From Octopus sinensis (taxonomy: Eukaryota), in contig NW_021831967.1 of assembly GCF_006345805.1 (NCBI RefSeq), forward strand, positions 1 to 33,823: 33,823 nucleotides of DNA. Reading direction: 5' to 3'. Of the stretch, positions 1,173 to 30,900 are shown one piece after another. The translations under genes were made by a program, and so were the position numbers. Position 1 is the first letter of the stretch. Each line of letters begins with the position of its first letter. Under the pieces are notes generated by a model, which searched no databases, was not told where the DNA came from, and saw only the letters and a program-made list of their open reading frames with translations.

Positions 1173-2177
1173 TTAAAGAGATTTAAAGCATACCGGTTTC
1201 CTAAAAACACTAATCATTGCTTTAGTATTTCGTTTGGCTTCCCTTAATGTTCGTATATCCATTTCCTTAGCTCGTTCAATGCCATCAGCTATTAATGATA
1301 TAGGGTAATGTCTTTTGATTAGTATTGATCTGAGTTCAAGGAGTCTTCGTTCACGATTATAGGTATCCGAAATTATGGTACAGATTCTTTTAGCTAGATT
1401 ATAAACGATATTAATTTTTATGTGTTTGGGGTGGTATGAGTTGAATAATAAGTATTGTTTAGTATCTGTGGGTTTATAGATGTCTTTTTCGATGTGGTTA
1501 TTGACTATTTTAATTGGGATATCAAGAAAAGGGAGTTGTTTACTACTGTGCTCCATGGTGAATTGTATGTTGCTATTGATATTGTTAAACATTATTTTGA
1601 AATCGAGGAGTTTGCCCATGCTGTCTTTCCAAAGTATAAAGTAATCATCCAAATACCTCTCTAGTTCTCCTTTAAATTGCGATGAAATGCGGTGCCATAT
1701 TCTGTAGTGAATATTGATGTATTTTAAGCTTTTACAAGGTTCGCAATCACTGCAGCAGCTAGGGTTCACATTGCAATTCCACATTTTTATCGATAGTAAA
1801 ATGTATCGAACATGAAATAGCTGTTCACTAGGATGAATCATGAATCTGTGGTTGATGCGTCCTGGGATCACTTCTGGGTATTTTTCTAGCCAGAAGGTGA
1901 TCGCTTCTATACCATAATCGTAGGGGATATTGCTGTAGAAATTCACCACATCGAATAATACTAATAGGGTTCCGTCATTTATTGTCTTTGGGAGGTGGTT
2001 GAGCATATCTAAGTCATCCCTGATAAAGCTTTTCACATATTTTAGAAACGGTTTAAGATGTCGAGGAAGTTGCTCAAACGGTGGGTTTCACAATCAGAGC
2101 CAGCAATGATGGGTCTCAGTTTGAGGTCAGTAGGTGGGGAGGAATATTAATACATAGGCTTGGAGAATCTTTGGAAG
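1173..2177 (-). mobile_element. Penelope-like retroelement RT fragment, decayed
   Basis: Minus-strand translation gives LRPIIAGSDCETHRLSNFLD, FDVVNFYSNIP, a broken GIAM*T motif in a shifted frame, RYLDD, QFTME..LPFLD and DIYKPT..YLLFNSYHP. These match the Penelope RT/thumb motif series. Frameshifts and stops are present and no GIY-YIG domain is seen. Confidence 0.85.
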
Positions 2178-5652: not shown

Positions 5653-5758
5653 CTACAACAGAAACATAACAAAGGTAAGTGAATAAAGTAAAATTGAATT
5701 TGCACAGAAATATTTATTTCTACCAAAATAAAACTGCAATCAACTTATGTATATAATA

Positions 5759-5971
5759 CAGCGTTACCCAAAAGTGGGTTTGCAGTTATTCAACTATCTC
5801 TTTCCCATTTATATATCAATACCTTAAAGCTTCATTATAACCAGAATATGAAACCATTAAACTATTATAATTTAGATAATTGTAAGATAGAAATTTGAAT
5901 GTAATAAAACGTTTTAAAAGTAATTTAAAGTGCCTAGGTGATAACCGTAAAGCTACTTTTGGGACACCCTG
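5759..5971. mobile_element. Candidate Tc1/mariner-type MITE, 213 bp
   Basis: Left end CAGCGTTACCCAAAAGT versus reverse complement of right end CAGGGTGTCCCAAAAGT (14/17 identical, weaker match continues inward). TA flanks at 5757-58 and 5972-73. Confidence 0.6.
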
Positions 5972-6799
5972 TATACTTTTGTATTTGAAGAATTGAATGA
6001 GAATATACGACGCAATTGATGCAATTCAGAATTTATTTATATCATTGTAGTAGATATTATATTTACTAGGTTCATTGCACTTGCATTCTGTGGAGATAAG
6101 TTTTGGGGACCTCTTTAGGTGATGGTTTTCTTGCTGGTCAGCCCGGATAGAGTAAATCACCGGCACTGCTACCAACAACAATATTCTAGCCATGACAGTA
6201 TTTTATATATTTGTTTTTGCCATTAGGAATTGTTTTTTTTCCTGTTCGTCCTTTCTTTCTTAAGATAGTAGACTGTAATCTACGGGAAATTTGACTGATA
6301 TTTCTAGCAAGTGAACTTATTAGGGTGTTGAATCTCCTTTTTACTAAAACCTAGTTTCCATTAATCCAGCTCTATTATATATAAGCACGTTCCGTGTTCT
6401 GGAACTGCTGCAGGCCTGAAAACTTTGGCTTGATCGAAGGATGCTCTTATCACGAAATCAGTTTTCAGTTTAAATTCCATGCCAAACGGAAATCAAAGCA
6501 TATGCAGTCCATGAAACAAAAAAATGTTTTTGGCCGGAGAACTCCAAGTAAAACTGAGAGTTCCAAGATTGCAATGTTTCTCCAACGTGGGTGCAGGAAA
6601 TTTTTGTTACTTAAGAAAAAACAAAATCTGACCCCAAAAGATACAGAGTGAAAATTTTTCCATCCGCAACCATCCTGTTTCAAACGTTGTTAATTCGAAG
6701 CCTCTATTAATTTATATGTCCAATTTTATGACGGTAACTTTGTAACTTGGGGGAATTGTCACTGTTATGTCAAGTATACATAGTGAAATAATCCAAACG

Positions 6800-6960
6800 C
6801 TTTTGCTGAACTCGCTGCCGTACTCCAATTCCAGTGGCAAGGATTTGAACGGCTCGGGGTTAGAATAGAAAACAATTGCCCAAGGTGCCGCCAAATGATA
6901 CTGAACCTGGGACCATATAGTTGGGAAGCATATTTCTAACTACACAGCCATGCCTGCACA
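6800..6960 (-). mobile_element. Degenerate SINE family B head
   Basis: Reverse complement resembles the 3345 head (GGCTGTGTAGTTAGAAATATGCTTCCCAAC...GGTTCAGTATC...GGCACCTTGGGCAA). Confidence 0.55.
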
Positions 6961-7077
6961 TGTTATTAATAATGCTATTCTTAATGAATAACAGCACATG
7001 AACAGTAAAAACCCTGCTTGTTTCTGATTTCTTCAACGTATGTTGTCAAAAATGTCCTGTAATATATAATGGCGAAT

Positions 7078-7725
7078 AAGGCGGCGAGCTGGCAGAAACG
7101 TTAGCACGCCGGGCGAAATGTTTAGCGGTATTTCGCATGCATTTGCGTTCTGAGTTCAAATTCCGCCGAGGTCGACTTTGACTTTCATCTTTTCAGGGTA
7201 GATAAATTAAGTATGAATTGGGTAGTGGGGTCGATGTAATCGACATAATCCCTTGCACTTGTTTATCCCCTCTATGTGTAGCCCCTGGTGGGCAATAAAG
7301 AAATAAGAAACGTTAGCACGCCGGGGGAAATGCTTAGAGGTCTTTCGTCTGTCTGCGTTCTGGGTTCAAATTCCGCCGAGATCGACTTTTCCTTTCATCC
7401 TTTCGGGGTCGATAAATTAAGTACGAATTGCGTAGTGGGATTGATCTAATTGATTGGCACCCTACCCCAAAATTTCGGGCCTTGTGCCTAGAGTAGAAAA
7501 GAATATTTCAAGGCGGTGAGCTAGCAGAAACGTTAGGATGCCGTTCGAAATGCTTCGCAGTATTTCGTCTGCTTTTACGTTCTGAATTCAAATTCCGCCG
7601 AGGTCGACCCTGCCTTTCATCCTTTCGGGGTCAATGAATTTAGAACCAGTTGCGTACTTGGGGTCGATCTAATTGACTGGCACTCTCCCCCAAAATGTCG
7701 GACTTTGTGCCTAGAGTAGAAAATA
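7078..7725 (+). mobile_element. Tandem array of three SINE family A copies
   Basis: Repeated unit (GGCGAGCTGGCAG)AAACGTTAGCACGCCGGGCGAAATG...GTTCAAATTCCGCCGAG.TCGAC..TTCATC.TT.C.GGGT at 7078, about 7308 (5'-clipped) and about 7510. Pol III A/B-box-like head. Confidence 0.85.
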
Positions 7726-8147
7726 ATATGTAATAGCGAACGTTCAACTTCTCCCAATTTGGTCAATTTATTTTACAAGATGATATCCGGGGCAATGTTT
7801 TCACCTCCCATGTATTCGCTGTCCATTCCTAGGTTGCCTAAGCAATATAATTGTCGTCGAAACGTAATAATTTGTTTTTAAGCATTCATACATAAATGTT
7901 TTATGCCCTTAAAATTAATTGCTGCAAAGGCATATCAACATTTTTGTTGACATGTAGAAGGGCCTGTGTAACATTTAAATAAATGAGAAAGAAGACAATG
8001 GTATACAATGGTATCGTATGCTTTTCATTTCAGAAATTAACTGCTGTATTTAAGCGCTTGTAGAATACATGTTATTTATTGACAGCTAATTATGTATTTT
8101 CTGCAATCTGAAATAAGTATAACAATATGAATGAAGATGACGATTAT

Positions 8148-8166
8148 ATTATCATCATCATCATCA

Positions 8167-8233
<67 letters not shown>

Positions 8234-8250
8234 CATTATTATTATTATTA
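8148..8250. repeat. (ATC)n(ATT)n microsatellite
   Basis: Direct reading. Confidence 0.95.
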
Positions 8251-8739
8251 GCTATTAAACCAAAATGAGGCGTAGTAAAAGCAGTGTAAATATGAACGAC
8301 AAGCATTTATGAAATTTTAACAAATCGTGAAAGAAAAATGAAGCAAATGGCAAAAGTGTATTTTCCAGAATATATTAATTCCTGTAAACAACATGAAAAA
8401 TTAGAAAATACATAAATTAACATGATATAAACGTACGTAAATGAAGAGATAGATCCAGAAAAATGAAGAACGAAAATGGAAAACAATATGCATAACGAAG
8501 GACGTATATAAATATGTAACGCATAATGTTTTGTTTTTTTTTGCCTTTCGGATAGAACCTATATTATATATAATTCAAATATTGAAGGGTTTCTGTGGAA
8601 AAAAATAGATTCAAAACTCTGGAGTTATTTCAGAACATAATATCATGAAATACATAAAAATTGTAGTCAACAATATCGACAAACACATAGTACTGTTTTT
8701 ATACGTTATCTCACACTCTCTCTATTCCCCCCTCTCTCT

Positions 8740-9207
<468 letters not shown>

Positions 9208-9532
9208 AAAAGCCGACAAGAAGATCTAAATCAAAACAGAATGCAGAGTAACTTGTACGCTTTTCCATCAGAAATGTTTTAATCCACAATTCACGGAGAA
9301 TTTAATAATAGTTTATAAACTACAATCCATCTGACGCGATAATTTTTTTAAGCATATTTAAATATGTATTCAGTATAGTGATGCATGTAAGAAAGAAATT
9401 ATATCTGCAATGCAAGGAATGGAAAGTGGAATGTTTACATCCCATTTTGTATTAAATAATAATAATTCTAATAAAATTATATAAAATCACTACTGATTGC
9501 CCTTTGGCTCTGTATCAATTTATACTAATGTC

Positions 9533-9611
9533 ATTATAGTATAGAAGACTATACTATAATTATAGTATAGAAGACTATACTATAGAAGACTATACTATTG
9601 AGTATAGAAGA
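9533..9611. repeat. Short tandem array of a palindromic unit (TATAGTATAG-AAGA-CTATACTATA)
   Basis: Perfect 12-bp-stem inverted repeat at 9533-9560, a second copy 26 bp later, then two partial copies. Confidence 0.8.
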
Positions 9612-10035
9612 TATCTACAATATGGCGATGTAACAGCCTTGTTTTATACGTCAACAACGTGTAGTCTTGTACATTTACCAAGCGCTTCCTTCTTCATAGT
9701 TTCGTAGGTAGGATTAACTTTGTTTTACTGTTGAGACTATTTACTGTTTACGACAGCACAACACGATAAAATCATAAGTTGGTTGTCGTATTTGTGCATA
9801 AATTAAACCTCTATGATTCATAATATCTTTTATCTTAATGTTTTTCGTCATGCAACTGAGGAAATATCTAATTAAAATTGTCATCTGTGTGTCATTTTTA
9901 ATGTATACACTTGTCGATAGGTCAGTTGCGATATTATTTGTCTGATATAACATCTCTTACAGACTTGCTGTGTTAAAAAACAAAATAAATATCAGAGTGA
10001 GGTGAAAATTCGTCCCAGCAGCGGCGGCGGTGAGG

Positions 10036-10078
10036 GCGCCAGATGCGTTTCGACCGTTTTGAGCCTTTTCAATGGCGC
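10036..10078 (-). ncRNA. Candidate minimal type I hammerhead ribozyme (Penelope-LTR type, U3-A8 core variant)
   Basis: Minus strand reads GCGCCA-UUGAAAA-GGCU-CAAAAC-GGUC-GAAA-CGCA-UC-UGGCGC: 6-bp perfect stem I, 4-bp stem II (two G-U pairs), GAAA, short stem III loop and a UC cleavage site. Confidence 0.5.
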
Positions 10079-10784
10079 ATATTCGCCAACAGTCACATCC
10101 TTCTTCATGAATGTATATTTCAAATTAACTTTTTAATAGTCCGTGCATTAAATAAGCCAAGAACAATGTTAGCTTTGAAACCAAGAATTATGAGACTGAA
10201 TATTATATTTTTTTTTAGAATATTTCTCTTATCACATGTTTTAAAAATATTATTCAAGAATTTCTCTTTCGTGGACAGTAAGTTCATAACTAGTTATAAC
10301 CAATCAAGAATAAGAAATACTGCGCCGATAATATTTATGAAGAAACTCAATTTTTTTGTACAAAGGAAAGTAATTGAAGTTTGCAGAGTAGAAAGTACGA
10401 ACAATAATTCATATAAGACACCAATATTTTGCAGAAACAGAATTGATTCTTTGTATGAAACTCTCTATTCAAAATTTATACATGAATTATTTTCTTACAA
10501 ATGAACCTGTCAGATAGCAGCCTACAAACAAGAAATACTTACAGAAAATATCAGTTCATTAAGAGGAAGGATATTGAAAATAGAAATACCAGTGACAGGA
10601 TTGATAAAAGAAATATAAATAAAGTAAGTAATGATGACAGACATTTCCTTCATGACCAAACTCTCATTGACGTTTTCAAATTCTATTTGGTAAAAGAAAA
10701 AAGAAGTCGGAAAGTGAGGTGCTGCAACAGAGTGAACATAGCAACAGAATGCGAGCGAATGAACGAGCGAATGTTTTATGTAGT

Positions 10785-11012
10785 CGGCGAGCTGGGAGAA
10801 ACGTTAGCACGCCGGACGAAATGCTTAGCAGTATTTCGTCTGCCGTTACGTTCTGAGTTCAAATTCCGCTGTGGTCGACTTTGCCTTTCATCTTTTCGGG
10901 GTCGATAAATTAAGTACCAGTTACACACTGGAGTCGATGTAATCGACTTAATCCCATTGTATGTTCTTGCTTGTCCCCTCTATATTTCGCCCCTTGTGGG
11001 CAATAAAGAAAA
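10785..11012 (+). mobile_element. SINE family A, near full length
   Basis: Same head, body and GGGCAATAAAGAAA tail as the copy at 7078. Confidence 0.85.
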
Positions 11013-11239
11013 AAGAAGATTAGAGAGAACAGAGAAGCATTCGTCACAGCACTTCTGGTGAGCAGGATGACCCAAGTTTTGTAGGATTCTTTGTTGCCCC
11101 TGAGTGTTGGTTTCCCTCATTGGGCAATTTTCGTGTTAATTATTATTGTTTTGAATCGCTTACTGAAGATTCCAATAGTCATTTTGTCGGTATTGTTCTA
11201 AATATTTTTTGTAGCTCTTCTCTCCAATAATGAAATCTT

Positions 11240-12020
11240 TGTTATTAATATCTCTTTATCACAGGTTTTGTTGGAGCTCCTGGAGTCATGCATTCGTAGC
11301 GGGCCTGCAACATGCAGCCCATGGTACTATGCTGCGTGTTCTTTTCGACTATCTAGTACTTTCCCGATTATTCTGGCCGTGCCAAGGAGGCAAAACTTTT
11401 ATAACAGTTCTACTGGGCACTCTTTTCCAATATCCTTGATATACCTCGTGAACCCTTTTGATACTGTTCGCAAGCAACCAACACTAATTGGCACTATCTT
11501 CACCTTCTTCATTTTCTATAACCTGACCATTTCGTACTTAAGAGGGTTGTATTTATCTACTTTTTTGCCTTCCTTCTTGACTATTCGTGAGTCAAAGGAG
11601 CATGCAACATCAACTATAGAGCACATGTTGTGCATCTTGTCGACCACTACTAGATCCAGCTTGATATGCTCTAGCATCTGATCAGTTTTGATTGGGAAAT
11701 CCCAGGGGATTTGCTAGTCTCCACTCCGCCACTTTCTGTTCTCATACCACTTCTTGCTCTCTAGCACCCACAGTTTCCAATGTAGCATTTTCGCTACCTT
11801 ATCGTGTAGCCACAACTTATAGTGGTTTTGGGCAAGTTTAGGGCATTCTTTCGTGATATGGGCAATATTTTTGTCAACTCTATTACAGATGCGGCACAGA
11901 GGAGATACTCGCTCATTCCTAATGTTGATCCTGCAATTCATGACCAAAGCTTGCTCATGCGCTGCCACTATAGTGCTCCCAGTCTGTTCCTTTTTTCAGC
12001 CAATCTCACTTATATTTTCC
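11240..12020 (-). mobile_element. R4/Dong-like RLE non-LTR retrotransposon 3' fragment (copy A)
   Basis: Minus translation: AAHEQAL, zinc knuckle CRIC..NIAHITKEC, HDKVAKMLHW, WDFPIKTD, IVDVACSFD..KKEGKKVDKY and LLGTARIIGKVL. This is the CCHC plus PD-(D/E)xK endonuclease end, with stops and frameshifts. Confidence 0.85.
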
Positions 12021-12029
12021 ACTTGTGTT

Positions 12030-12193
12030 GTTGCCGCTGTTATTATTATTTTTATTATTGTTGTTGTTATAATTATTACTATTTTTATCTTTATTTTTAT
12101 TTTTATTGTTGTTGTTGTTGTTATTATTATTATTATTATTTTTATTGTTGTTGTTGTTGTTCTTCTTTTTATTATTATTATTATTATTATTTA

Positions 12194-12267
<74 letters not shown>
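12030..12267. repeat. (TTA)n/(TTG)n array, i.e. (AAT)n tail of RLE copy B on the minus strand
   Basis: Directly follows the 3' UTR of copy B and precedes the 5' junction of copy A. Confidence 0.9.
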
Positions 12268-12269
<2 letters not shown>

Positions 12270-14095
12270 TAGCCGTATTTTTATCACTTGCTTTCACCAC
12301 ACTACCATGCATAGCTCTGTGTGCCTCGGCTTTGTGCTGTGGTGTGTTGTGGTGCTCTTACCGTCATTGTATTTAAAGTGTTTTAGGTAGGATGTGTGCG
12401 GTACCTAGTAGTGCTATTTTCTGTAAATCGTATACACTTATAAGTCCTGGTGTTTTGCTTATGTATTTGTCTGAATGTTTTTTATATCATACTTAATACA
12501 CATACTATCATAAGAATTGTTTCTGTTTTTAGGCTCTACATTCGAGTTACTTCTATTTCCAGATCTTTGTATGTTGAAAGATTATAAACGTTTTCATCTG
12601 TTGGCATTGATACATCAGTGAAGGCGCGTGGTTTAGTGGTTAGTGCATTTGACTCACGAGCGTAAGGTTGTCAGTTCAATACCCAACGACGCGTTGTGTC
12701 CAGGAGCAAGACACTTTATTTCACGTCGCTCCAGTCCACTCATCTAGCAAAAGTGAATGATACCTGTATTTCAAAGGGCCGGCCTTGCGACACTCTGTCA
12801 CACTGAATCTCCCTGAGAACTGCGTTAAGTGTACACGGGTCATGCTCAGCGACATGCATTTTAGGAGCAAGCTGTTCCGTTGATCGTATTAGCTGAAACC
12901 TTCGTCGTCGTAACCGACGTAGTGCCCCTCATTGATACATCGATTAGAAGGCATTCTTTCCTTAGTGATCACTGTCACCTATATTCGGTATGTTAGCCTT
13001 GATTTCTCTATCTGTGTGTATTGGCATATCCCAGATTATGGTTGCTTTCTCATTTTCTGTGACCCTTTCTGGGGTGTGCCTATACTGTCTCTTTTCTGTT
13101 GTCATTTCATAGTGTTTGCATAGCATCCAGGGTATATAGGTCCCAACTCTTTCATGTCCGTGAATATTTTCTTTCTTAGCCAGGACTCTGGGCAGCCAGA
13201 GACAATATGATTTATTGTTTTTTCTCCATCCCCACATATTCTGCAGTTACGTGTTGTATTTGTTTACATTTTGTATTTTGATGATTTCTGATGGGAAGAC
13301 TTTGATCTTGTGCTGCAATTAAAATTCCTCCAGTCTCTGATTTCAGTCCTGAGCTTCTCAACCAACGTCGGGATTTTGCTTTGTTTATTATTTATCTATT
13401 TACCTAACCCAGTATTTGACATGTAGGGCCTTTTCTTGCCATTGTCTTATCATGATACGCTGTTGTACCAGTTTTAGTATGGATTGTAGCTGTTCTACAG
13501 ATTTCGTTGTTTCTTCTTTCCTTCAATGACTTCTCTTTTGTATTTTTCAGCTTCCTCAAAGACAGAAAACAGATTTTTGGCTTCGTATTTTGTGGCTTGT
13601 TGTGTCAGTTTTCTTTGCTTCTGAAGTAGCTATTTGTTTAATTCTATGGTGGTTATTTTAGTTTTCTAGCTGTATAAGGCTTCTATCACCTTCAATATGT
13701 TAAATATATATAACTTTTCTACGTCAGATTTTGGGTGGTGCATCCTAAAATCTGTCATCATTTTTCTTGTTTTCCTATTTTGATTAGTTCATTTAGAGTC
13801 CAGTTAAGAACATTATAGCTATACCTTACAACCGGGACGGTTAGAGTGTTGATACCTATTATCTTGGTTTTCGCATTGAGATCTGCTTTAATCTAACACG
13901 TCTATAGTATTCCTTTCTTATCTTCTCTTTCATTTTTGTGTGTTAAATCGTATCTAGTTCATCGATTCCTAAATATTTGTATGTCTGGCTTTGGTCTAAT
14001 TCTCTTATTTCATTTGCTTTATCTAGTGTGATGTTGTTACTCTTTACTAGTTTTCGTTTTATTAAAGGTTACTTTGGTACATCTTTTCATCATCA
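12268..14095 (-). mobile_element. R4/Dong-like RLE retrotransposon, 5'-truncated (copy B), interrupted by a SINE
   Basis: Minus translation gives YKYLGID, INTLTVPVVRYSYNVLNW, VLAKKENIHGHERVGTYIPW.LCKHY, TENEKATIIWDMPIHTDREIKAN, LLIDVSMPTD and LQKIALLGTAHIL, then a 3' UTR and (AAT)n. Confidence 0.85.
12617..12929 (+). mobile_element. tRNA-headed SINE, family C, with 12-bp TSD
   Basis: Head GGCGCGTGGTTTAGTGGTTAG...AGTTCAATACCC. Flanking direct repeat CATTGATACATC at 12605-12616 and 12930-12941. Confidence 0.85.
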
Positions 14096-14231
14096 ACATC
14101 ATTGAGGATAATGATGATGAAATTAACAACAAAAATGATGATGATAATGATGATGATGATAAGAAGAAGAAGGAGGAGGAGGAGGAGGAGGAGAAGAAGG
14201 AGAATAAGAAGAAGAAGAAGAAGGAGGAGGA

Positions 14232-14278
<47 letters not shown>

Positions 14279-14370
14279 AGAAGGAGAGGAGGAGGAGAAG
14301 AAGAAGAAGAAGAAGAAGAAGAAGAAGAAGAAGAAGAAGAAGAAGAAGAAGAAGAAGAAGAAGAAGAAGA
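14096..14370. repeat. (GAT)n/(GAG)n/(GAA)n purine-rich compound microsatellite
   Basis: Direct reading. Confidence 0.95.
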
Positions 14371-14762
14371 ATGCTGTGCATGTCTGAGAGAAATGGAAAA
14401 ACTAGGAAAATAGAACTATCGAGATAGATAGCAATCTGGAAATCGATTTAACTAGAATGCGATGTTACTCTACTCTACTCGCTGTTTTAGATAGATTGTA
14501 CATATGCTGATGATGCAGATGGTGGAACTATGACCTTATACATACACACAAGCCGGATAGTCTAAGTATAGGTTTTCCTCATGTTAGTCGTAGTATTTTC
14601 GGTAAAACTAGAAAATGAAAAAGAGAAAATGCACGTACTGAAGAAGGACATTACTTCATTCTGCTATGCAGTGTAAGGAACTGGAATATTTTTTCGTAAC
14701 AAAAAAAAAATCAAAAAATAAAGGAACCGAAACATTGAATGATGTATTGAAGTTATACTTAC

Positions 14763-15199: not shown

Positions 15200-15706
15200 T
15201 GTAATCGACTAGACAACTCCTCCTCCCCGAAAAAATTCAAGCCTTGTGCCTTTAGTAGAAATAATTTTTATTACTTTATCAACCCCGAAATTATGAAAGG
15301 CAAAGTCGGCTTCAAAATGTAAAGATGGACGAAATACTCCAAATCGACAACATTCGTAATGTCGATGGATGGGATAATTCGATTACATCGCCCCTTGTGT
15401 TAACCTTTTATCGACTACGGAAGGACAAAATGCTAAGCAGACTGCAACATAATTTTGGCTCGGACATAAAGACGGACGAAACACCGCTAAGCATTTTGCC
15501 CGGCTTACTTAACGATACTGCCACTTTCATGATGACCATAACGAGTATATCGACCCCAGAGTTTCACTGGTACATATTTTACTAACCTCGAAAGGATGAA
15601 AGTCAAAGTCGAACTCAGTGGAATTTGTACTCAGAACGTAGCGACATGCGAAATTCCGCTAAGCATTTCGCCCAGCAAGCTAACGATTCTGTCAGCTCGC
15701 TGTCCT
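15200..15706 (-). mobile_element. Cluster of degenerate SINE family A copies
   Basis: Reverse complement of 15545-15706 gives AGGACAGCGAGCTGACAGAATCGTTAGC...GGGCGAAATGCTTAGCGG...TTTCATCCTTTCG. More degraded pieces lie at about 15200-15530. Confidence 0.7.
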
Positions 15707-15949
15707 CATAATATGTCAAGAAAATATTAAGAATTGCTCAATGAGATCGAAAAATGTGGCATCTCAAGACGGTTAAAATGACAGTGAATGTAGGAGAACG
15801 CTGGAATGGTAAAAAAATGGTGTTGAAAATTGTTTGAGATAAGCAACCCCAGCAAGAAGAGGTCCAATCCAAATTGAAACGGCTAATAAAACAACCACGG
15901 TAGGACAGAAGATGTACATCTAATGTAACGCTAACTGGATGATACGGCT

Positions 15950-17895: not shown

Positions 17896-18466
17896 GACCT
17901 TACACACAGGGGCATACTCATATACTCATATAGTTGCAATTTCCAGGAAGTTTTCGTTGTGAAGAGTACAAAACTACAATGGGTATTTTTTCTAATTCCC
18001 TACGCTTTTTTTTTTCTGTATCGGATAAGTGCAATATTCCTTCCTATGTTATTACGCATTCATACTTTTCTCAATAATTATGCTTGCGGATACAGAAAGA
18101 TTTGGGAAAAATAGTTGCGAGCAGAAGTACTACACTTAGAGGCTTTCTTTTTTTGCCATTGTGTTATAGACATCGCCATTTACAATAACTTAAATAATAT
18201 GTCACACGCGGCTTAGTCGTTAGGTGTCAAGCTAAAACCGCGGGATATATTTAAAGCACAACACTATTACCAGCTCCAGAATTTGCACGATGATGTCATA
18301 ATGATATAGTTGCCAAATACTTTTGAATCAGTAATTTTCTGCATGAAATAATGTGGTAGCGCAGTGATGTAAATGGTTTTCATTTGGTACATACAATCAT
18401 ACAAGTTTGCCCATAGAGAGCGGCAACGATGTATTTCTGTCTGTCTATCTGTCTATGTGTGTTGGC

Positions 18467-18467
<1 letters not shown>

Positions 18468-18564
<97 letters not shown>
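18468..18564. repeat. (TATC)n array, left flank of the Tx1-like element
   Basis: Pure TATC run ending at the element junction ATCT|TCTGGA. Confidence 0.95.
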
Positions 18565-18565
<1 letters not shown>

Positions 18566-21534
18566 CTGGATGTTGACGGCAGCAATGGGTGCGCTTTTCG
18601 ACTCGTATCAGTCTACGCACCGCCCTTAACAGGTCGGGCGGATTTCTTTCGACGTCTAGAAGTATTCTTGGGAACGTCTCGTCCTTTACTCTTAGTGGGG
18701 GATTGGACTGCTACCTTGGACACGCATGTAGACTACGTGGGTAGAGACAGAAACAGAAGGGGATGCAAATGCCTCAGAGACCTGCTCAGACGATTCCAAC
18801 TGTCTGACAGGTACCGACTCGACCACCCAAATGCACCAACGTGGACATGGAGCAACCGCAGTGGGTCGTCGAGATCGTATCTAGATAGGATACTGTGTAG
18901 GACAGTAGACAAGGATAACTTAGGATGTCCACAATTCCACACAGTCAGCTACACGGATCACAAATTGGTGACGTGTACGCTAGACTTAGATAAGGCACAT
19001 AGACAGGGTCCTGGGTACTGGAAACTGAACGCATCATTCCCGTCCAGACAAGTTTTCAGAGACCGGATTAGCACACTAGTAAAGAGGGCTTTGACGGGAG
19101 CCATCATCAACAACAAATGGTGGTTTGCCCTCAAGAGAGCAGTAAAAGCAGAAGCGATTAGGTACAGCAAAGCACTAGCCATAGATAGAAATAGAGTAGA
19201 GGGTGAGCTAGTTAAGAAGCTAGAAGAGGCAATTAGAAGCGGCATCGCATCCGACGTTTTGGCGGCGAGGTTGGCCCTCGACCAACACTTCAACGCCAAA
19301 CACGAAGGATGTGCTGTCAGAGCTAGGATGCGTGCTCTAAGGAACGAAGGTGTTGGAGCCGCGAGAGAGGCCCGGGTGGCAGAGGCGCAACAGGGCAACA
19401 AAGCCACCATTCGGTCACTGGTAGATGAACAGGGGCGCGAATTGCTCGAGCCAAGTAAAATGTGTGAGGCCTTTCAGCAGCATTTTGCCCGACTGTTCGG
19501 GACGAGTGGAGGGCAAGAACGTAGGGTAGACTTCAGTGCCTACCTACATAGCCTGCCACGACTCTCGACAAGAAAGGCAGGGTGCTGCGAAGGTGCCATC
19601 ACGGCGGCGGAAGTGCGGGAAGCGATGGCAGAATGCTCGAGGGACAAATCACCGGGTTTGGATGGTCTACCCTACGAATTTTACTATTGTATGCCAGACT
19701 TGTTTGGAGACGTCTTGGCAGCGGTATACTGCAACTGGCAGCAAAACGGGAGCATACCCGGTTTTGTGAGTCGAGGAGCTGTAACTCTGCTGAAGAAAGA
19801 TCCAAACAAGGGAAACATTATAGATAACTTTAGGCCAATCACTCTGCTCAATGCAGACCTGAAAATTTTGACAAAGGTGTTAGCCAAGAGGTTGGCGCTT
19901 GTCATGGAGAAACTGGTCGACAACGCACAAACGTGCGCCGTGCCGGGCCGGAGCATCCATGACAACCTCCATCTGATGCGCTACATCATAGACAGGGTAG
20001 TTAACGAACCTGGCATGGGTGGGGCCCTGATCAACTTGGATCAATCGAAAGCCTTTGATAGGGTAGACCATCGATACTTGGAGGCAGTCCTGAGAGCGGC
20101 TGGTTTCGGTCCCGTCTTCCGCGGCTGGATAGCTGCCTTGTACAGGGGCATCCGTTCGGTAATTCGCGTAAATGGACATCTATCGAGACCCTTCGACATT
20201 GCACGTTCGGTCCGTCAGGGATGCCCCCTCTCGGCGCTTCTATACGTATTGACTCTTGAGCCACTACTGCGGAAGCTGGCGACTCTGAGGGGCATCCCGC
20301 GAGAATTAGGATGAGGGACGAGCGTGTCTGCATACGCGGACGACGTCACCGTCATAGTGTCAAGCCACGAGCACATCGAGCGGGTCGGCGAGACACTGAA
20401 AGACTACGAAGCGGTGACAGGAGCAAAAATCAACCGGGAAAAGTCAGTGGGCTTGCGGCTCGGCACCTGGAGAAGCAAGCCCATGCCGTCCACCAGTACC
20501 TCCGTCGTGGGACGCTGGACAGACGGCCCGGTTGAGTTGCTCGGGGTCTGGTTCGGTCCGGACCTCCAAATGGAGAAGAACTGGAACGAGATAACGAGTA
20601 GGGTGGTCACTCTCGCCCAGCAATGGGCCGAGAGGAAACTGTCCCTAAAAGGTCGGGCGGAGGTGGTGAACGCGTACATCGCGTCCATCATCTACTACCG
20701 CCTGACCGTCGTACCTTGTCCCGACCCTACCATCACCAAACTAGAACGCATCCTCTTCCGCTTCTTGTGGAAAGGATGCGTCCCGATGGTCAGGCGATCC
20801 ATTTGCTGTCAACACCCGTTAAAAGGAGGGCTGGGCATGCCGTGGTTGATGATGCGCAGACACGCGCTGAGACTGCGACATCTCCGGCTCTATGTAGACG
20901 ACGGTGAACAGGTGTGGTCACCGTTTGTGAGGCACGCATTCCCGCAACTCGTCTCCATGACCGAACTACAGTCGTGGATCAAAAAGAGGCCGAAGAAGGG
21001 CGAATGGCACCGCGAGTGTCGCGTTGCTCTCAAGCAACTCTGCCGTCCCGGGTCGACCTTGAGTGACTTCAACACAACCAAAGCATTCTATAGGGGATTA
21101 GTGGAGGGGAGGTACGACGACGAGCTCGGGGCAAACCTGGGCGTCGACGAGGAATACCTGACCCGCCTGTTTCAAACGAATTTCGGCCCGGGACCTATGG
21201 ACAATTTCCAGAGATCCCTGGCCTGGCGGTGCTACCGAGAAGCGCTACCCGTTCGGGATAAGCTCTATAGGCATGGCTCGAGAAACACGGGGCCGACCTG
21301 CCCGAGATGCGGGCAGAGCGACGAAGCCGCTCTGCACGCAATCGTGCAGTGTCCAGCAATTTCCCACCTGTGGGCTTATGTCGAACAACTGCTGTCACGT
21401 GTGGGACGTGTCGGTTTATCAGCCGAGTCTATCGTTAATATCGTTTTGTCTAGTGAATTTTTAAAAAAAGATGGGTGAATGTAGCAAGGATGGCACGTAT
21501 GAATGACGAAGCCACCTTGACTATGATTCTATGA
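18565..21534 (+). pseudogene. Tx1-like ORF2 (EN-RT-Zn), interrupted by one nonsense codon and a C-terminal frameshift or deletion
   Basis: ORFs 18407-20314 and 20324-21478 share a frame (LG*GTSVSAYADD). An L1/Tx1-like C-terminus FKKRWVNVARMARMNDEATLTMIL* lies in another frame at 21460-21534. Confidence 0.85.
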
Positions 21535-25355: not shown

Positions 25356-26113
25356 TTGGGTTCGCATCAGTTCCCACCGTTTTTTTTTTTTAAATTTTGG
25401 AATCTATTGCGTTTGCAAATTTTGGAATCTATTGTGTTTCGAGAATTTTATTTCTGAATAATTTTGGAATCTATTTTGTTTTGTTTCGTTTTTTATAGTT
25501 AATTTTGGCTAATTTTGGTTTATTTTCAGATCATTAAAATGGAATGTCGAGTTAAGAAAAACGAACATCTTCGACACCTCCGTCTTTTTGCTTTTCATCA
25601 AGGTTCTAAGGCCGCAAAAGCTGCTGACGGTATTTGTGCTGTATATGGAGAAGGCGCCATAACTGAAGGAACCGCTCGTGATTGGTATGCCAAGTTCAAA
25701 AATGGAAATTTTGACCTCAAAGTCGCACCTCGTTCTGGCCGTCAGGTTGAGTTCGATGAAGAGCAATTAAACCAACTTTTGCCCGAAGATTCTCGTCAAA
25801 CGACAAGGGAACTGGCAGAGAAAAGGGCATGCTCACACACTGCTATAGAGAAACATCTTCACTCGATGGGAAAGGTTCAGAAGTATGGAGCATGGGTTCC
25901 GCATGCTTTAAGTGACAGCAACAGAAATCAACGAGCCACAATCTCCGCTGGTTTGCTTGCTCGTCACCGCTCAACTGATGGACACAAGCAACGATTTCTT
26001 TACCGTATCGTTACTGGTGACGTAAAATGGTGCCTCTACATCAATATGAATCAACGTAAGGAATGGCTTAACCCCGGTAAACAAGCGATTCCGCACGTAA
26101 AAGATCTTCACCA
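25356..26113 (+). mobile_element. Mariner transposon 5' half (TIR, N-terminal transposase), 3'-truncated
   Basis: TA-TTGGGTT... terminus. ATG at 25539 gives MECRVKKNEHLRH...WYAKFKNG (HTH)...PRSGR...WVPHAL...IVTGDVKW (first catalytic D), ending at KDLH where SINE sequence starts. Confidence 0.9.
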
Positions 26114-26405
26114 GCTGCGTTCTAAGGTCGATCTAATCGACTCGCTCCCTCCCCCAAAAATTCGGGCCTTGTGTCTCGAGTAGAAAAGATTATTCAAGGC
26201 GGCGAGCTGGCAAAATCGTTAGCACACCGGGCGAAATGCTTACCACTATTTCATCTGTCTACGTTCTGATTTCAAATTCCGCCGAGGTCGACTTTACATT
26301 TCATCCCTTCGGGGTCTATCATAAAAGTACCACTTGAATTCTGGGGTGGATGTAATCGACATAAATCCTCCCATGTAATTGCTGGCCTGAAACCAATATT
26401 TAATC
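26114..26405 (+). mobile_element. SINE family A 3' half followed by a full copy
   Basis: GGTCGATCTAATCGAC...CCCCAAAAATTCGGGCCTTGTG..GAGTAGAAAAGATTATT, then AAGGCGGCGAGCTGGC at 26196. Confidence 0.8.
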
Positions 26406-28315: not shown

Positions 28316-28574
28316 TGATAATAATACTACTACTAATAATAATAATATAACTAATGATAATCCATTCTACATTAGGCACAAGGCCTGCAATTTGGGGGAA
28401 GGGGATAAGTCGATTACATCGACCCCAGTGTGTGACTGGTACTTAATTTATCGTCCTGAAAGAATGAAAGGCAAAGTCAATCTCGGTGGAATTTGAGCTC
28501 AGATGGAGCTAGCTGCAAGCGGAATACCAGCGTGCTAACGATTCTGCCAGCTGACTGCAATAATAATAATAATG

Positions 28575-29444: not shown

Positions 29445-29600
29445 AGTCGATTAGATCGACCCAATTATGCAACAGGTATTTAATTTATCGACCTTGAAAG
29501 GATGAAAGGCAAAGTCGACCTCGGCGTAATTTGAACTCAGAATGTAACGGCAGACAAAGAACGAAATTTATATTCTTTTCTACTCTAGGCACAAGGCCCG
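29445..29600 (-). mobile_element. SINE family A fragments, inverted
   Basis: GTCGATTAGATCGACCC...GAAAGGATGAAAGGCAAAGTCGACCTCGGCG.AATTTGAACTCAGAA is the reverse complement of the family A body. Confidence 0.75.
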
Positions 29601-30519: not shown

Positions 30520-30900
30520 GTCCTTTCTACTCTAGGCACCGGCCTAAACTACAACTTAATTTATCGACCGCGAAAGTGTGAAAGGCAAAGTCGACCACGG
30601 TGGAATTTGAACTGAGAATGTAAAAGCATACGAATCACGAAATTTATATTCCAACGAGGTGGCATAATAACTCCGAAATATAGCCGACGTTTTCTATAGA
30701 ATTTGCATCATGATTGAAATGATATTGGTTTCAAATTTCGGCAAAAGGCCAGCAAGTTCGATCCCAGTGCTCACCACGTAATTTATTTAATGGTCACTTT
30801 TCAAGGATGAAAATCAAATTTGACCTCGGCAGAATTTGAACTTGAAATGTATAGACAGAGAAAATACCGCCCAGTATTTTATCCGGCATGCTAACGGTTT
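30520..30900 (-). mobile_element. Degenerate inverted SINE family A fragments
   Basis: GAAAGGCAAAGTCGACCACGGTGGAATTTGAACT and GACCTCGGCAGAATTTGAACTT...CCGGCATGCTAACG. Confidence 0.65.

What the first reader, a model, noticed from the sequence alone, without database searches (positions are those of the whole stretch)
10036..10078. Hammerhead-ribozyme-like fold with compensatory U3-A8 core on the sense strand of an SLC6 intron
Seen on the minus strand, the same strand as the SLC6 exons: stem I GCGCCA/UGGCGC, core UUGAAAA, stem II GGCU/GGUC, GAAA, CGCA loop, then UC. Established: the C3-G8 pair in the CUGANGA core can be replaced by U3-A8, and minimal type I hammerheads with a palindromic stem III (GAAACGCGUC) occur in Penelope-like LTRs and can act as dimers. 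Here both C3 and G8 are changed together, while the palindrome has one change (ACGCAU). Inference: a Penelope-LTR relic or active variant that could cleave the transporter pre-mRNA between 10042 and 10041.
Basis: partly seen in the sequence, partly recalled or inferred. Interest (0 to 1): 0.72.

Follow-up and report, generated by a model that had tools for sequence, protein, structure and literature searches.

The report
Lone hammerhead-like motif in octopus intron
A 43-base stretch inside an intron of an octopus glycine-transporter-like gene really does have the layout of a hammerhead self-cutting RNA, but it looks like a lone, weakened leftover of the ribozyme-carrying mobile elements common in animal genomes, not a working regulator of the gene.

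Summary
The motif is at 10036-10078 (-) exactly as described, mid-way in a verified 9.1 kb GT-AG intron of a partial GlyT1-like SLC6 gene on Octopus sinensis contig VCDQ01001242.1.

It is more than chance. It has the published canonical metazoan type-I geometry: helix I 6 bp, helix II 4 bp closed by G10.1-C11.1, helix III 1 bp plus a tetraloop. Expectation is about 6e-6 per window. Same-composition decoy cores on 167 kb of octopus DNA almost never score. Loop 2 (CAAAAC) resembles the HH9 model's CAAAAA.

It is weak evidence for a working ribozyme:
- Rfam gives only 14.7 bits to HH9 (cut-off 52).
- Fold z-scores are -0.2 to -1.0.
- Helix II is worth -0.8 kcal/mol.
- Helix III cannot form alone.
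- The non-palindromic CGCA loop cuts dimer pairing from -8.9 to -2.3 kcal/mol.
- No second copy exists in the window or in 133 kb of other octopus DNA.

The U3-A8 core is already documented in Schistosoma Penelope-like elements. A Penelope origin could not be tested, and the geometry fits canonical retrozyme-type hammerheads better than PLE minimal ones.

Verdict: probable solo hammerhead relic, probably inactive; a new member of a known kind; low interest.

The parts
10073..10078 (-). Helix I, 5' strand GCGCCA (positions 2.6-2.1)
   Evidence: Pairs with 10036-10041 by six Watson-Crick pairs. Only about 29% populated in a +-100 nt ensemble.
10066..10072 (-). Core box UUGAAAA: U3 U4 G5 A6 A7 A8 A9, in place of the consensus CUGANGA
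   Evidence: The U3-A8 covariation is documented in Schistosoma Cercyon PLE hammerheads (PMC4209133).
10052..10065 (-). Helix II GGCU/GGUC (G10.1-C11.1 plus two G-U pairs) with 6-nt loop 2 CAAAAC
   Evidence: The hairpin alone is worth -0.8 kcal/mol. Loop 2 aligns with CAAAAA of the Rfam HH9 consensus.
10042..10051 (-). G12 A13 A14, A15.1, loop 3 CGCA, U16.1, C17. The predicted scissile bond lies between 10042 and 10041.
   Evidence: Helix III has zero probability in the monomer. The dimer helix III is -2.3 kcal/mol, against -8.9 for the palindromic CGCG version.
10036..10041 (-). Helix I, 3' strand UGGCGC (positions 1.1-1.6)
10079..10088 (-). 5' side of a possible internal loop 1 (AAUAU) and closing stem (UGGCG). 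The same UGGCG can instead pair with CGCCA of helix I, forming a competing hairpin.
   Evidence: The MFE of the 71-nt segment shows closing stem, internal loop and helix I. The HH9 model alignment spans it. The alternative pairing wins in three of four longer contexts.
10025..10035 (-). 3' side of the possible internal loop 1 (CCUCAC) and closing stem (CGCCG)
9985..10110 (.). GC-rich island (51% GC) in an intron of about 34% GC that carries the motif. Presumed remnant of the inserted element. Unique within the window.
   Evidence: Composition. No self-similarity elsewhere in the window. No Pfam match in any frame.
5653..14762 (-). Host intron (GT-AG, phase 0, 9,110 nt) of the partial GlyT1-like SLC6 gene model

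Best explanation
The motif is a solitary copy of a metazoan type-I hammerhead ribozyme carrying the known U3-A8 core variant. It most likely arrived with a hammerhead-bearing retroelement (retrozyme-type or Penelope-like; which one cannot be told here) and now lies by chance in sense orientation in the middle of an SLC6 intron. In principle the intronic RNA could fold into the three-way junction and cut itself after C17 (base 10042). As it stands it should be very slow or inactive, for four reasons: helix II is marginal, helix III is a single pair, the tetraloop is no longer self-complementary so the dimer route used by such hammerheads is crippled, and no second copy is nearby. No effect on the transporter mRNA is expected. 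Shown: the sequence match, its rarity, its context and its energetics. Inferred: the retroelement origin and the lack of activity.
For: - Exact match to the published canonical type-I geometry (helix I 6 bp, helix II 4 bp, helix III 1-2 bp capped by a 2-4 nt loop; PMC4209133, PMC7229834), with G10.1-C11.1, GAAA, A15.1-U16.1 and C17.
- Expected 6.5e-6 times per window. Decoy cores on real octopus DNA: mean 0.008 hits against 1.
- The best Rfam alignment is to type-I Hammerhead_HH9 across the whole model, including loop 2 CAAAAC against CAAAAA.
- Canonical-core hammerhead motifs are also enriched in other octopus DNA: 2 hits against a decoy mean of 0.0125. So such motifs are a normal part of these genomes.
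- The U3-A8 core occurs in about 1,300 Schistosoma motifs.
- Weakness as a ribozyme: helix II -0.8 kcal/mol, helix III probability 0, dimer helix III -2.3 against -8.9 kcal/mol, helix I 29% populated, a competing hairpin, fold z-scores of -1.0 and -0.2.
- No partner or tandem copy.
- Monomers of single-pair helix III hammerheads cleave poorly even when intact (6% for the axolotl monomer; PLE motifs show no detectable monomer activity).
Against: - Rfam gives no hit at gathering scores, and none at E<=10 on 701 nt. The HH9 match is only 14.7 bits against a cut-off of 52.
- No related copy was found in 167 kb of octopus DNA or in JGI metagenomes. Family membership therefore rests on one sequence.
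- My narrow descriptor was fixed after seeing the candidate, although it follows published criteria.
- The loop 1 nucleotides do not match the HH9 consensus.
- No flanking retroelement sequence, tandem unit or target-site duplication was recognised.
Confidence: 0.62

Rival explanations
1. Chance resemblance. A GC-rich patch of unknown origin happens to contain an inverted repeat (GCGCCA/UGGCGC) flanking A-rich sequence that can be read as a hammerhead once two core mismatches are excused as a covariation.
For: - No Rfam significance; 14.7 bits only.
- Fold energies are indistinguishable from shuffles.
- Two of the invariant core bases differ from consensus, two of the four helix II pairs are G-U, and loop 3 is not palindromic.
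- It is a single copy.
- A loose descriptor is expected 0.02 times per window, roughly 1,500 times per genome. A scan over many windows will therefore meet chance hits.
Against: - Chance hits of this quality are far rarer: 6.5e-6 per window for the canonical geometry and 7e-9 with a CAAA loop 2.
- No Markov hit with helix I >= 6 in 60 Mb.
- Only 2 of 239 same-composition decoys score at all on real octopus DNA.
Confidence: 0.2
2. A Penelope-like element pLTR relic specifically: the motif is what remains of a PLE terminal repeat.
For: - PLE terminal repeats always carry hammerheads, and the U3-A8 core was first seen in a PLE.
- Some PLE hammerheads (Drosophila, rotifers, shrimps) have a small palindromic helix III rather than none.
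- PLEs are present in this genome and in this window (1176-2087).
Against: - Min-HHR hallmarks are absent: no extra nucleotide between A9 and 10.1, helix II of 4 bp not 6-8, helix I of 6 bp not 4-5, and 15.2-16.2/loop 3 not palindromic.
- There is no PLE coding or repeat sequence around it.
- The window's PLE fragment is 8 kb away, across an exon.
- The octopus PLE copies fetched contain no similar motif, but the one inspected (L003) is truncated, so this last point is uninformative.
Confidence: 0.15
3. A functional, domesticated intronic ribozyme that cleaves the SLC6 pre-mRNA co-transcriptionally, analogous to the amniote HH9/HH10 intronic hammerheads.
For: - It is on the sense strand, mid-intron.
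- The best Rfam alignment is to the intronic HH9 family.
- The 71-nt MFE reproduces closing stem, internal loop, helix I and helix II.
- All stem departures from G-C pairing keep pairing (G-U), and the core change is compensatory.
Against: - The predicted folding is weak and contested.
- There is no stable helix III, whereas the HH9 model has 9 nt where this motif has 4.
- No conservation data are available.
- The host gene model is a partial, chimeric annotation on an unplaced 33.8 kb contig, with its last 'exon' taken from a transposon ORF.
- Sense orientation is a 50% prior.
Confidence: 0.04

Closest known systems
Canonical metazoan type-I hammerheads of non-LTR retrozymes and satellite DNA (newt, axolotl HHR_Amex1, Schistosoma, coral, mussel)
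   Same: Type-I topology; helix I 6 bp; helix II 4 bp with G10.1-C11.1; helix III a single A15.1-U16.1 pair capped by a tetraloop; GAAA and C17; an internal loop plus closing stem beyond helix I.
   Different: U3-A8 instead of C3-G8; a non-palindromic tetraloop (CGCA); two G-U pairs in helix II; loop 1 nucleotides unlike the consensus; not in a ~150-400 bp tandem repeat; single copy in the window.
Minimal hammerheads (min-HHR) of Penelope-like element pLTRs, including the U3-A8 Cercyon variant of Schistosoma mansoni
   Same: The U3-A8 core covariation; very short helix III implying action as a dimer; often found as dispersed single motifs from truncated elements.
   Different: No unpaired nucleotide between A9 and 10.1; helix II 4 bp (not 6-8); helix I 6 bp (not 4-5); 15.2-16.2/loop 3 not palindromic; not inside a recognisable pLTR.
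Amniote intronic hammerheads HH9/HH10 (Rfam RF02275, RF02277)
   Same: Type I, on the sense strand of an intron of a protein-coding gene. HH9 is the best-scoring Rfam model, aligned end to end, with a similar loop 2 (CAAAAC against CAAAAA).
   Different: 14.7 bits against a gathering score of 52. HH9 has a canonical core and a longer helix III (9 nt against 4 in the alignment) and is ultraconserved. Here conservation is unknown and the core is variant.

Membership tests
Hammerhead ribozyme (class) | Three helices around the core C3 U4 G5 A6 N7 G8 A9 / G12 A13 A14 / A15.1-U16.1 / H17 | tested here: inconclusive
   All positions are present except C3 and G8, which are replaced together by U3 and A8, a documented natural covariation. 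The strict consensus is not met; the covariant consensus is met.
Hammerhead ribozyme (class) | Site-specific self-cleavage 3' of position 17 | not testable with these tools
   Needs in vitro transcription or RNA end mapping. The energetics predict poor activity as a monomer.
Rfam hammerhead families (clan CL00010: Hammerhead_1, _3, _II, HH9, HH10) | Score at or above the family's gathering threshold | tested here: not met
   No hit at gathering scores. No hit at E<=10 on 701 nt. HH9 scores 14.7 bits against 52 on 76 nt.
Canonical metazoan type-I hammerhead (retrozyme/satellite type) | Helix I 6 bp, helix II 4 bp, helix III 1-2 bp capped by a 2-4 nt loop | tested here: met
   6 bp / 4 bp / 1 bp plus a 4-nt loop, against the definition in PMC4209133 and PMC7229834.
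Canonical metazoan type-I hammerhead (retrozyme/satellite type) | Palindromic loop 3 allowing a dimeric helix III | tested here: not met
   ACGCAU is not self-complementary. The self-duplex is -2.3 kcal/mol against -8.9 for ACGCGU. Being one change from a palindrome is true of 37.5% of tetraloops.
Canonical metazoan type-I hammerhead (retrozyme/satellite type) | Conserved loop 1 / loop 2 nucleotides for the tertiary contact | tested here: inconclusive
   Loop 2 CAAAAC resembles CAAAAA in the HH9 consensus. Loop 1 (AAUAU/CCUCAC) does not match UUAC/UAC. Mussel retrozyme hammerheads also lack most of these nucleotides.
Canonical metazoan type-I hammerhead (retrozyme/satellite type) | Located in short tandem repeats (~150-400 bp units, dimers to multimers) | tested here: not met
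   No repeat of 9600-10500 anywhere in the window. No second motif.
PLE minimal hammerhead (min-HHR) | Unpaired nucleotide between A9 and 10.1, long helix II (6-8 bp), short helix I (4-5 bp) | tested here: not met
   No bulge, helix II 4 bp, helix I 6 bp, against the hallmarks listed in PMC4209133.
PLE minimal hammerhead (min-HHR) | G10.1-C11.1 pair | tested here: met
   G at 10065 pairs with C at 10052.
PLE minimal hammerhead (min-HHR) | Lies in a pLTR flanking a PLE RT/GIY-YIG ORF, or belongs to a multi-copy consensus family in the genome | tested here: inconclusive
   No PLE sequence is adjacent; the nearest RT fragment is at 1176-2087. There is no copy in 133 kb of other octopus DNA. The whole genome could not be searched, and the inspected PLE copy (L003) lacks terminal repeats.

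The most novel reading that the evidence does not exclude
The motif is a working, domesticated U3-A8 hammerhead kept in the sense strand of a cephalopod neurotransmitter-transporter intron. There it would cut the nascent transcript and tune splicing or transcript yield. That would be an invertebrate counterpart of the amniote HH9/HH10 intronic ribozymes, and the first natural U3-A8 hammerhead tied to a host gene.
Probability: 0.04. Interest if true: 0.7.

Novelty: new member of a known kind. Interest (0 to 1): 0.25.

Why it matters
If it is real, it adds one degenerate example to the tens of thousands of type-I hammerhead motifs already known in animal genomes, and hints that octopus genomes carry a U3-A8 core family like the one in Schistosoma. 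That is useful for repeat and ribozyme annotation of cephalopod genomes but not surprising. It would matter only if the motif proved active and conserved in the orthologous intron. It would then be a rare case of a ribozyme co-opted by a host gene outside amniotes. Nothing found here points that way.

Tried and rejected
1. Is the GC-rich island a missed SLC6 exon or another coding exon? No Pfam match in any frame, and homologues align contiguously across the two flanking exons. Rejected.
2. Finding other copies through a 156-aa ORF overlapping the island. The protein search and the exact look-up found nothing.
3. A second assembly of the locus via the annotated protein. Only this contig carries it.
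4. The homologous intron in a paralogue (P0008). The gene is an intronless ORF on an unrelated metagenome contig.
5. The Penelope hypothesis via octopus PLE copies. Six loci were fetched. None has a motif like the candidate or a copy of the island and Rfam found nothing on the four scanned. The one copy inspected (L003) ends in microsatellite after the RT thumb, with no terminal repeat, so the test is uninformative.
6. A sensitive Rfam scan of three loci. It was swamped by microsatellite-driven miRNA false positives and was uninformative.
7. A DNA pattern scan of JGI metagenomes for the helix II/loop 2 core in both core versions. Zero hits, as expected for a non-octopus collection.
8. A CpG-decay argument for CGCG>CGCA. 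The window shows little CpG depletion (o/e 0.88; island 1.2-1.5), so neither age nor deamination can be inferred. Dropped.
9. Thermodynamic z-scores as support. -1.0 and -0.2, no signal.
10. Two key papers (PMC5785218 on PLE dimers, PMC2933863 on intronic HH9/HH10) are not held. I relied on reviews instead.

Full report
**What is there.** On the minus strand, 10078 to 10036 reads GCGCCA-UUGAAAA-GGCU-CAAAAC-GGUC-GAAA-CGCA-UC-UGGCGC. In hammerhead numbering:
- Helix I is six Watson-Crick pairs (10078-10073 with 10041-10036).
- The core box is U3 U4 G5 A6 A7 A8 A9.
- Helix II is G10.1-C11.1, G-U, C-G, U-G, with a 6-nt loop.
- G12 A13 A14 follow, then A15.1 and U16.1 around the tetraloop CGCA.
- C17 is base 10042.

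**Where it is.** The window is the whole of contig VCDQ01001242.1 of the Octopus sinensis assembly GCA_006345805.1.
- Two exons match the Pfam SNF family: about 14990-14763 and 5652-5422, both on the minus strand.
- Homologues align without a gap across the junction, so no exon is missing between them.
- The intron is canonical: AAA|GTAAGT at 14762 and TTGTAG| ending at 5653, 9,110 nt, phase 0. The motif lies near its middle, on the sense strand.
- The NCBI model (P0001, 'glycine transporter 1-like, partial') takes its last exon from a transposon ORF at about 1433-1194. The host gene annotation is therefore partial and chimeric.
- The motif sits in a 126-bp patch of 51% GC (9985-10110), inside an intron of about 34% GC. 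The patch is unique in the window and has no Pfam match in any frame.

**Is it more than chance?**
- Curated models say little. There is no Rfam hit at gathering scores and no hammerhead at E<=10 on 701 nt.
- When only 76 nt are scanned, Hammerhead_HH9 (RF02275) appears at 14.7 bits against a gathering score of 52. That score alone would be reached by chance many times per genome.
- Fold energies are ordinary: z = -1.0 for 56 nt and -0.2 for 71 nt.
- Motif statistics tell a different story. A loose type-I descriptor with the U3-A8 core (helix I >= 3, helix II >= 4) occurs 17 times in 60 Mb of first-order Markov sequence. That is 0.02 per window and about 1,500 per genome, with none reaching helix I >= 6.
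- The candidate meets the much narrower geometry that the literature gives for canonical metazoan type-I hammerheads: helix I 6 bp, helix II 4 bp, helix III 1-2 bp capped by a 2-4 nt loop (PMC4209133; PMC7229834).
- With local composition, that geometry with G10.1-C11.1 and a U3-A8 core is expected 6.5e-6 times in this window, about 0.6 times in 2.7 Gb. If loop 2 must start CAAA, as in the HH9 consensus, the figure is 6e-4 per genome.
- As a control that keeps the hairpin content of real DNA, I permuted the letters of the two core boxes and scanned 167 kb of octopus DNA on both strands. The 239 decoys of U3-A8 composition gave a mean of 0.008 hits (two decoys with one hit each), against one hit for the true boxes. 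The 719 decoys of C3-G8 composition gave a mean of 0.0125, against two hits for the true boxes.

I conclude that the sequence is very probably descended from a hammerhead, and that hammerhead motifs are a normal component of octopus genomes.

**Which kind of hammerhead?** The HH9 alignment runs end to end, from 10090 to 10020. It covers a closing stem, an internal loop, helix I, the core, a 4-bp helix II with loop CAAAAC (model CAAAAA), GAAA, a shortened helix III (4 nt against 9) and UC. The 71-nt minimum-energy structure reproduces closing stem UGGCG/CGCCG, internal loop, helix I and helix II.
- This is the canonical type-I layout found in satellite and retrozyme hammerheads and, in domesticated form, in amniote introns.
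- It is not the PLE 'min-HHR' layout. That layout has an extra nucleotide after A9, a helix II of 6-8 bp, a helix I of 4-5 bp and a palindromic 15.2-16.2/loop 3.

**Would it work?**
- Helix II alone is worth -0.8 kcal/mol.
- Helix III has zero probability in the monomer.
- The dimer route used by hammerheads with one-pair helix III needs a self-complementary 15.1-16.1 segment. ACGCAU gives -2.3 kcal/mol, where ACGCGU would give -8.9.
- 'One change from a palindrome' is not evidence of ancestry, because 37.5% of tetraloops have that property.
- In +-100 nt of context, helix I is only 29% populated. In three of four contexts its 5' strand is taken by an upstream hairpin, UGGCG-AAUAUG-CGCCA.
- No second copy, intact or degenerate, exists in the window to act as a partner.
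- Published data set the expectation. An intact axolotl monomer of this type self-cleaves about 6%. PLE minimal motifs show no detectable monomer activity and low dimer activity.

I therefore expect at most trace activity, and no consequence for a 9-kb intron that is removed anyway.

**Origin.** I could not search an octopus genome at the DNA level.
- Indirect routes failed: an ORF overlapping the island, the annotated protein and a paralogue.
- The window has a PLE RT fragment at 1176-2087 (-). Its homologues carry RVT_1, and one carries GIY-YIG.
- I fetched six octopus loci with related copies. None contains a copy of the island or a motif like the candidate, and Rfam found nothing on the four loci scanned at gathering scores. 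The one copy inspected in detail (L003) breaks off after the RT thumb, with no terminal repeat.
- Some cephalopod PLE lineages (Naiads) are reported to lack canonical hammerheads.
- The Penelope-relic idea therefore stays open but unsupported. Geometry favours a retrozyme-type source, but no tandem unit is present.

**Verdict.**
- It is a new member of a known, very abundant kind.
- Probabilities: hammerhead-derived solo relic 0.62 (origin left open, so the 0.15 below lies within this figure), coincidence 0.2, PLE relic specifically 0.15, functional intronic ribozyme 0.04.

Noticed in passing
L007:69-111 (-) and L007:481-523 (+) (O. bimaculoides CM046618.1): Two copies of a canonical-core hammerhead-like motif: UGAAC CUGAAGA UUGCA-UAAA-UGCAA GAAA GUAUAC U A GUUCA. 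The 15.1-16.1 segment is a perfect 8-nt palindrome (AGUAUACU). They lie in the ~110-nt inverted arms (1-115 / 477-561, 92-97% complementary) of a 560-bp element next to a (TA)n tract. 10.1-11.1 is U-A, not G-C. Rfam does not recognise them.
   Followed up: partly
L007:19983-20027 (+): A third canonical-core motif: CUCAUA CUGAGGA UGGGU-AACC-ACCCA GAAA CCUAUG U C UGUGAG (helix I 6 bp, helix II 5 bp). It lies in non-coding sequence, antisense to an Snf7-family gene model. Together with the pair above, the true core boxes beat 718 of 719 decoy boxes.
   Followed up: partly
window 1194-1433 (-) and 1176-2087 (-): The NCBI model for the GlyT1-like protein (P0001) ends in about 80 residues taken from a Penelope-like element RT ORF, so the annotated protein is a chimera. 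The PLE fragment's homologues carry RVT_1, and one carries GIY-YIG, although Pfam does not hit the window ORF itself.
   Followed up: partly
window 18368-21475 (+): A GC-rich (50-57%) non-LTR retrotransposon with two long ORFs interrupted by a single in-frame stop. RVT_1 and zf-RVT domains are confirmed. The N-terminal part looks like an AP endonuclease by eye.
   Followed up: partly
window 7079-7678, 10776-11017, 15271-15711, 26197-26364, 28399-28503, 29445-29558, 30554-30899: At least eleven copies (70-86% identity) of a ~170-240 bp SINE-like repeat on both strands. One copy lies about 700 bp from the hammerhead motif but does not include it.
   Followed up: partly
window 25503-26180 (+): A mariner/Mos1-type transposase fragment (HTH_48 domain, E = 4e-17).
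   Followed up: no
window 10073-10088 (-): UGGCG-AAUAUG-CGCCA forms a hairpin that competes with helix I of the hammerhead fold. With UGGCGCC at 10035-10041, the element GGCGCC occurs three times within 55 nt.
   Followed up: yes
L003, L004, L005 (whole loci): In permissive Rfam scans, octopus (TA)n/(CA)n microsatellites produce hundreds of sub-threshold matches to miRNA families (mir-297, mir-3149, mir-1277, mir-466). This is a systematic false-positive source for such genomes.
   Followed up: no
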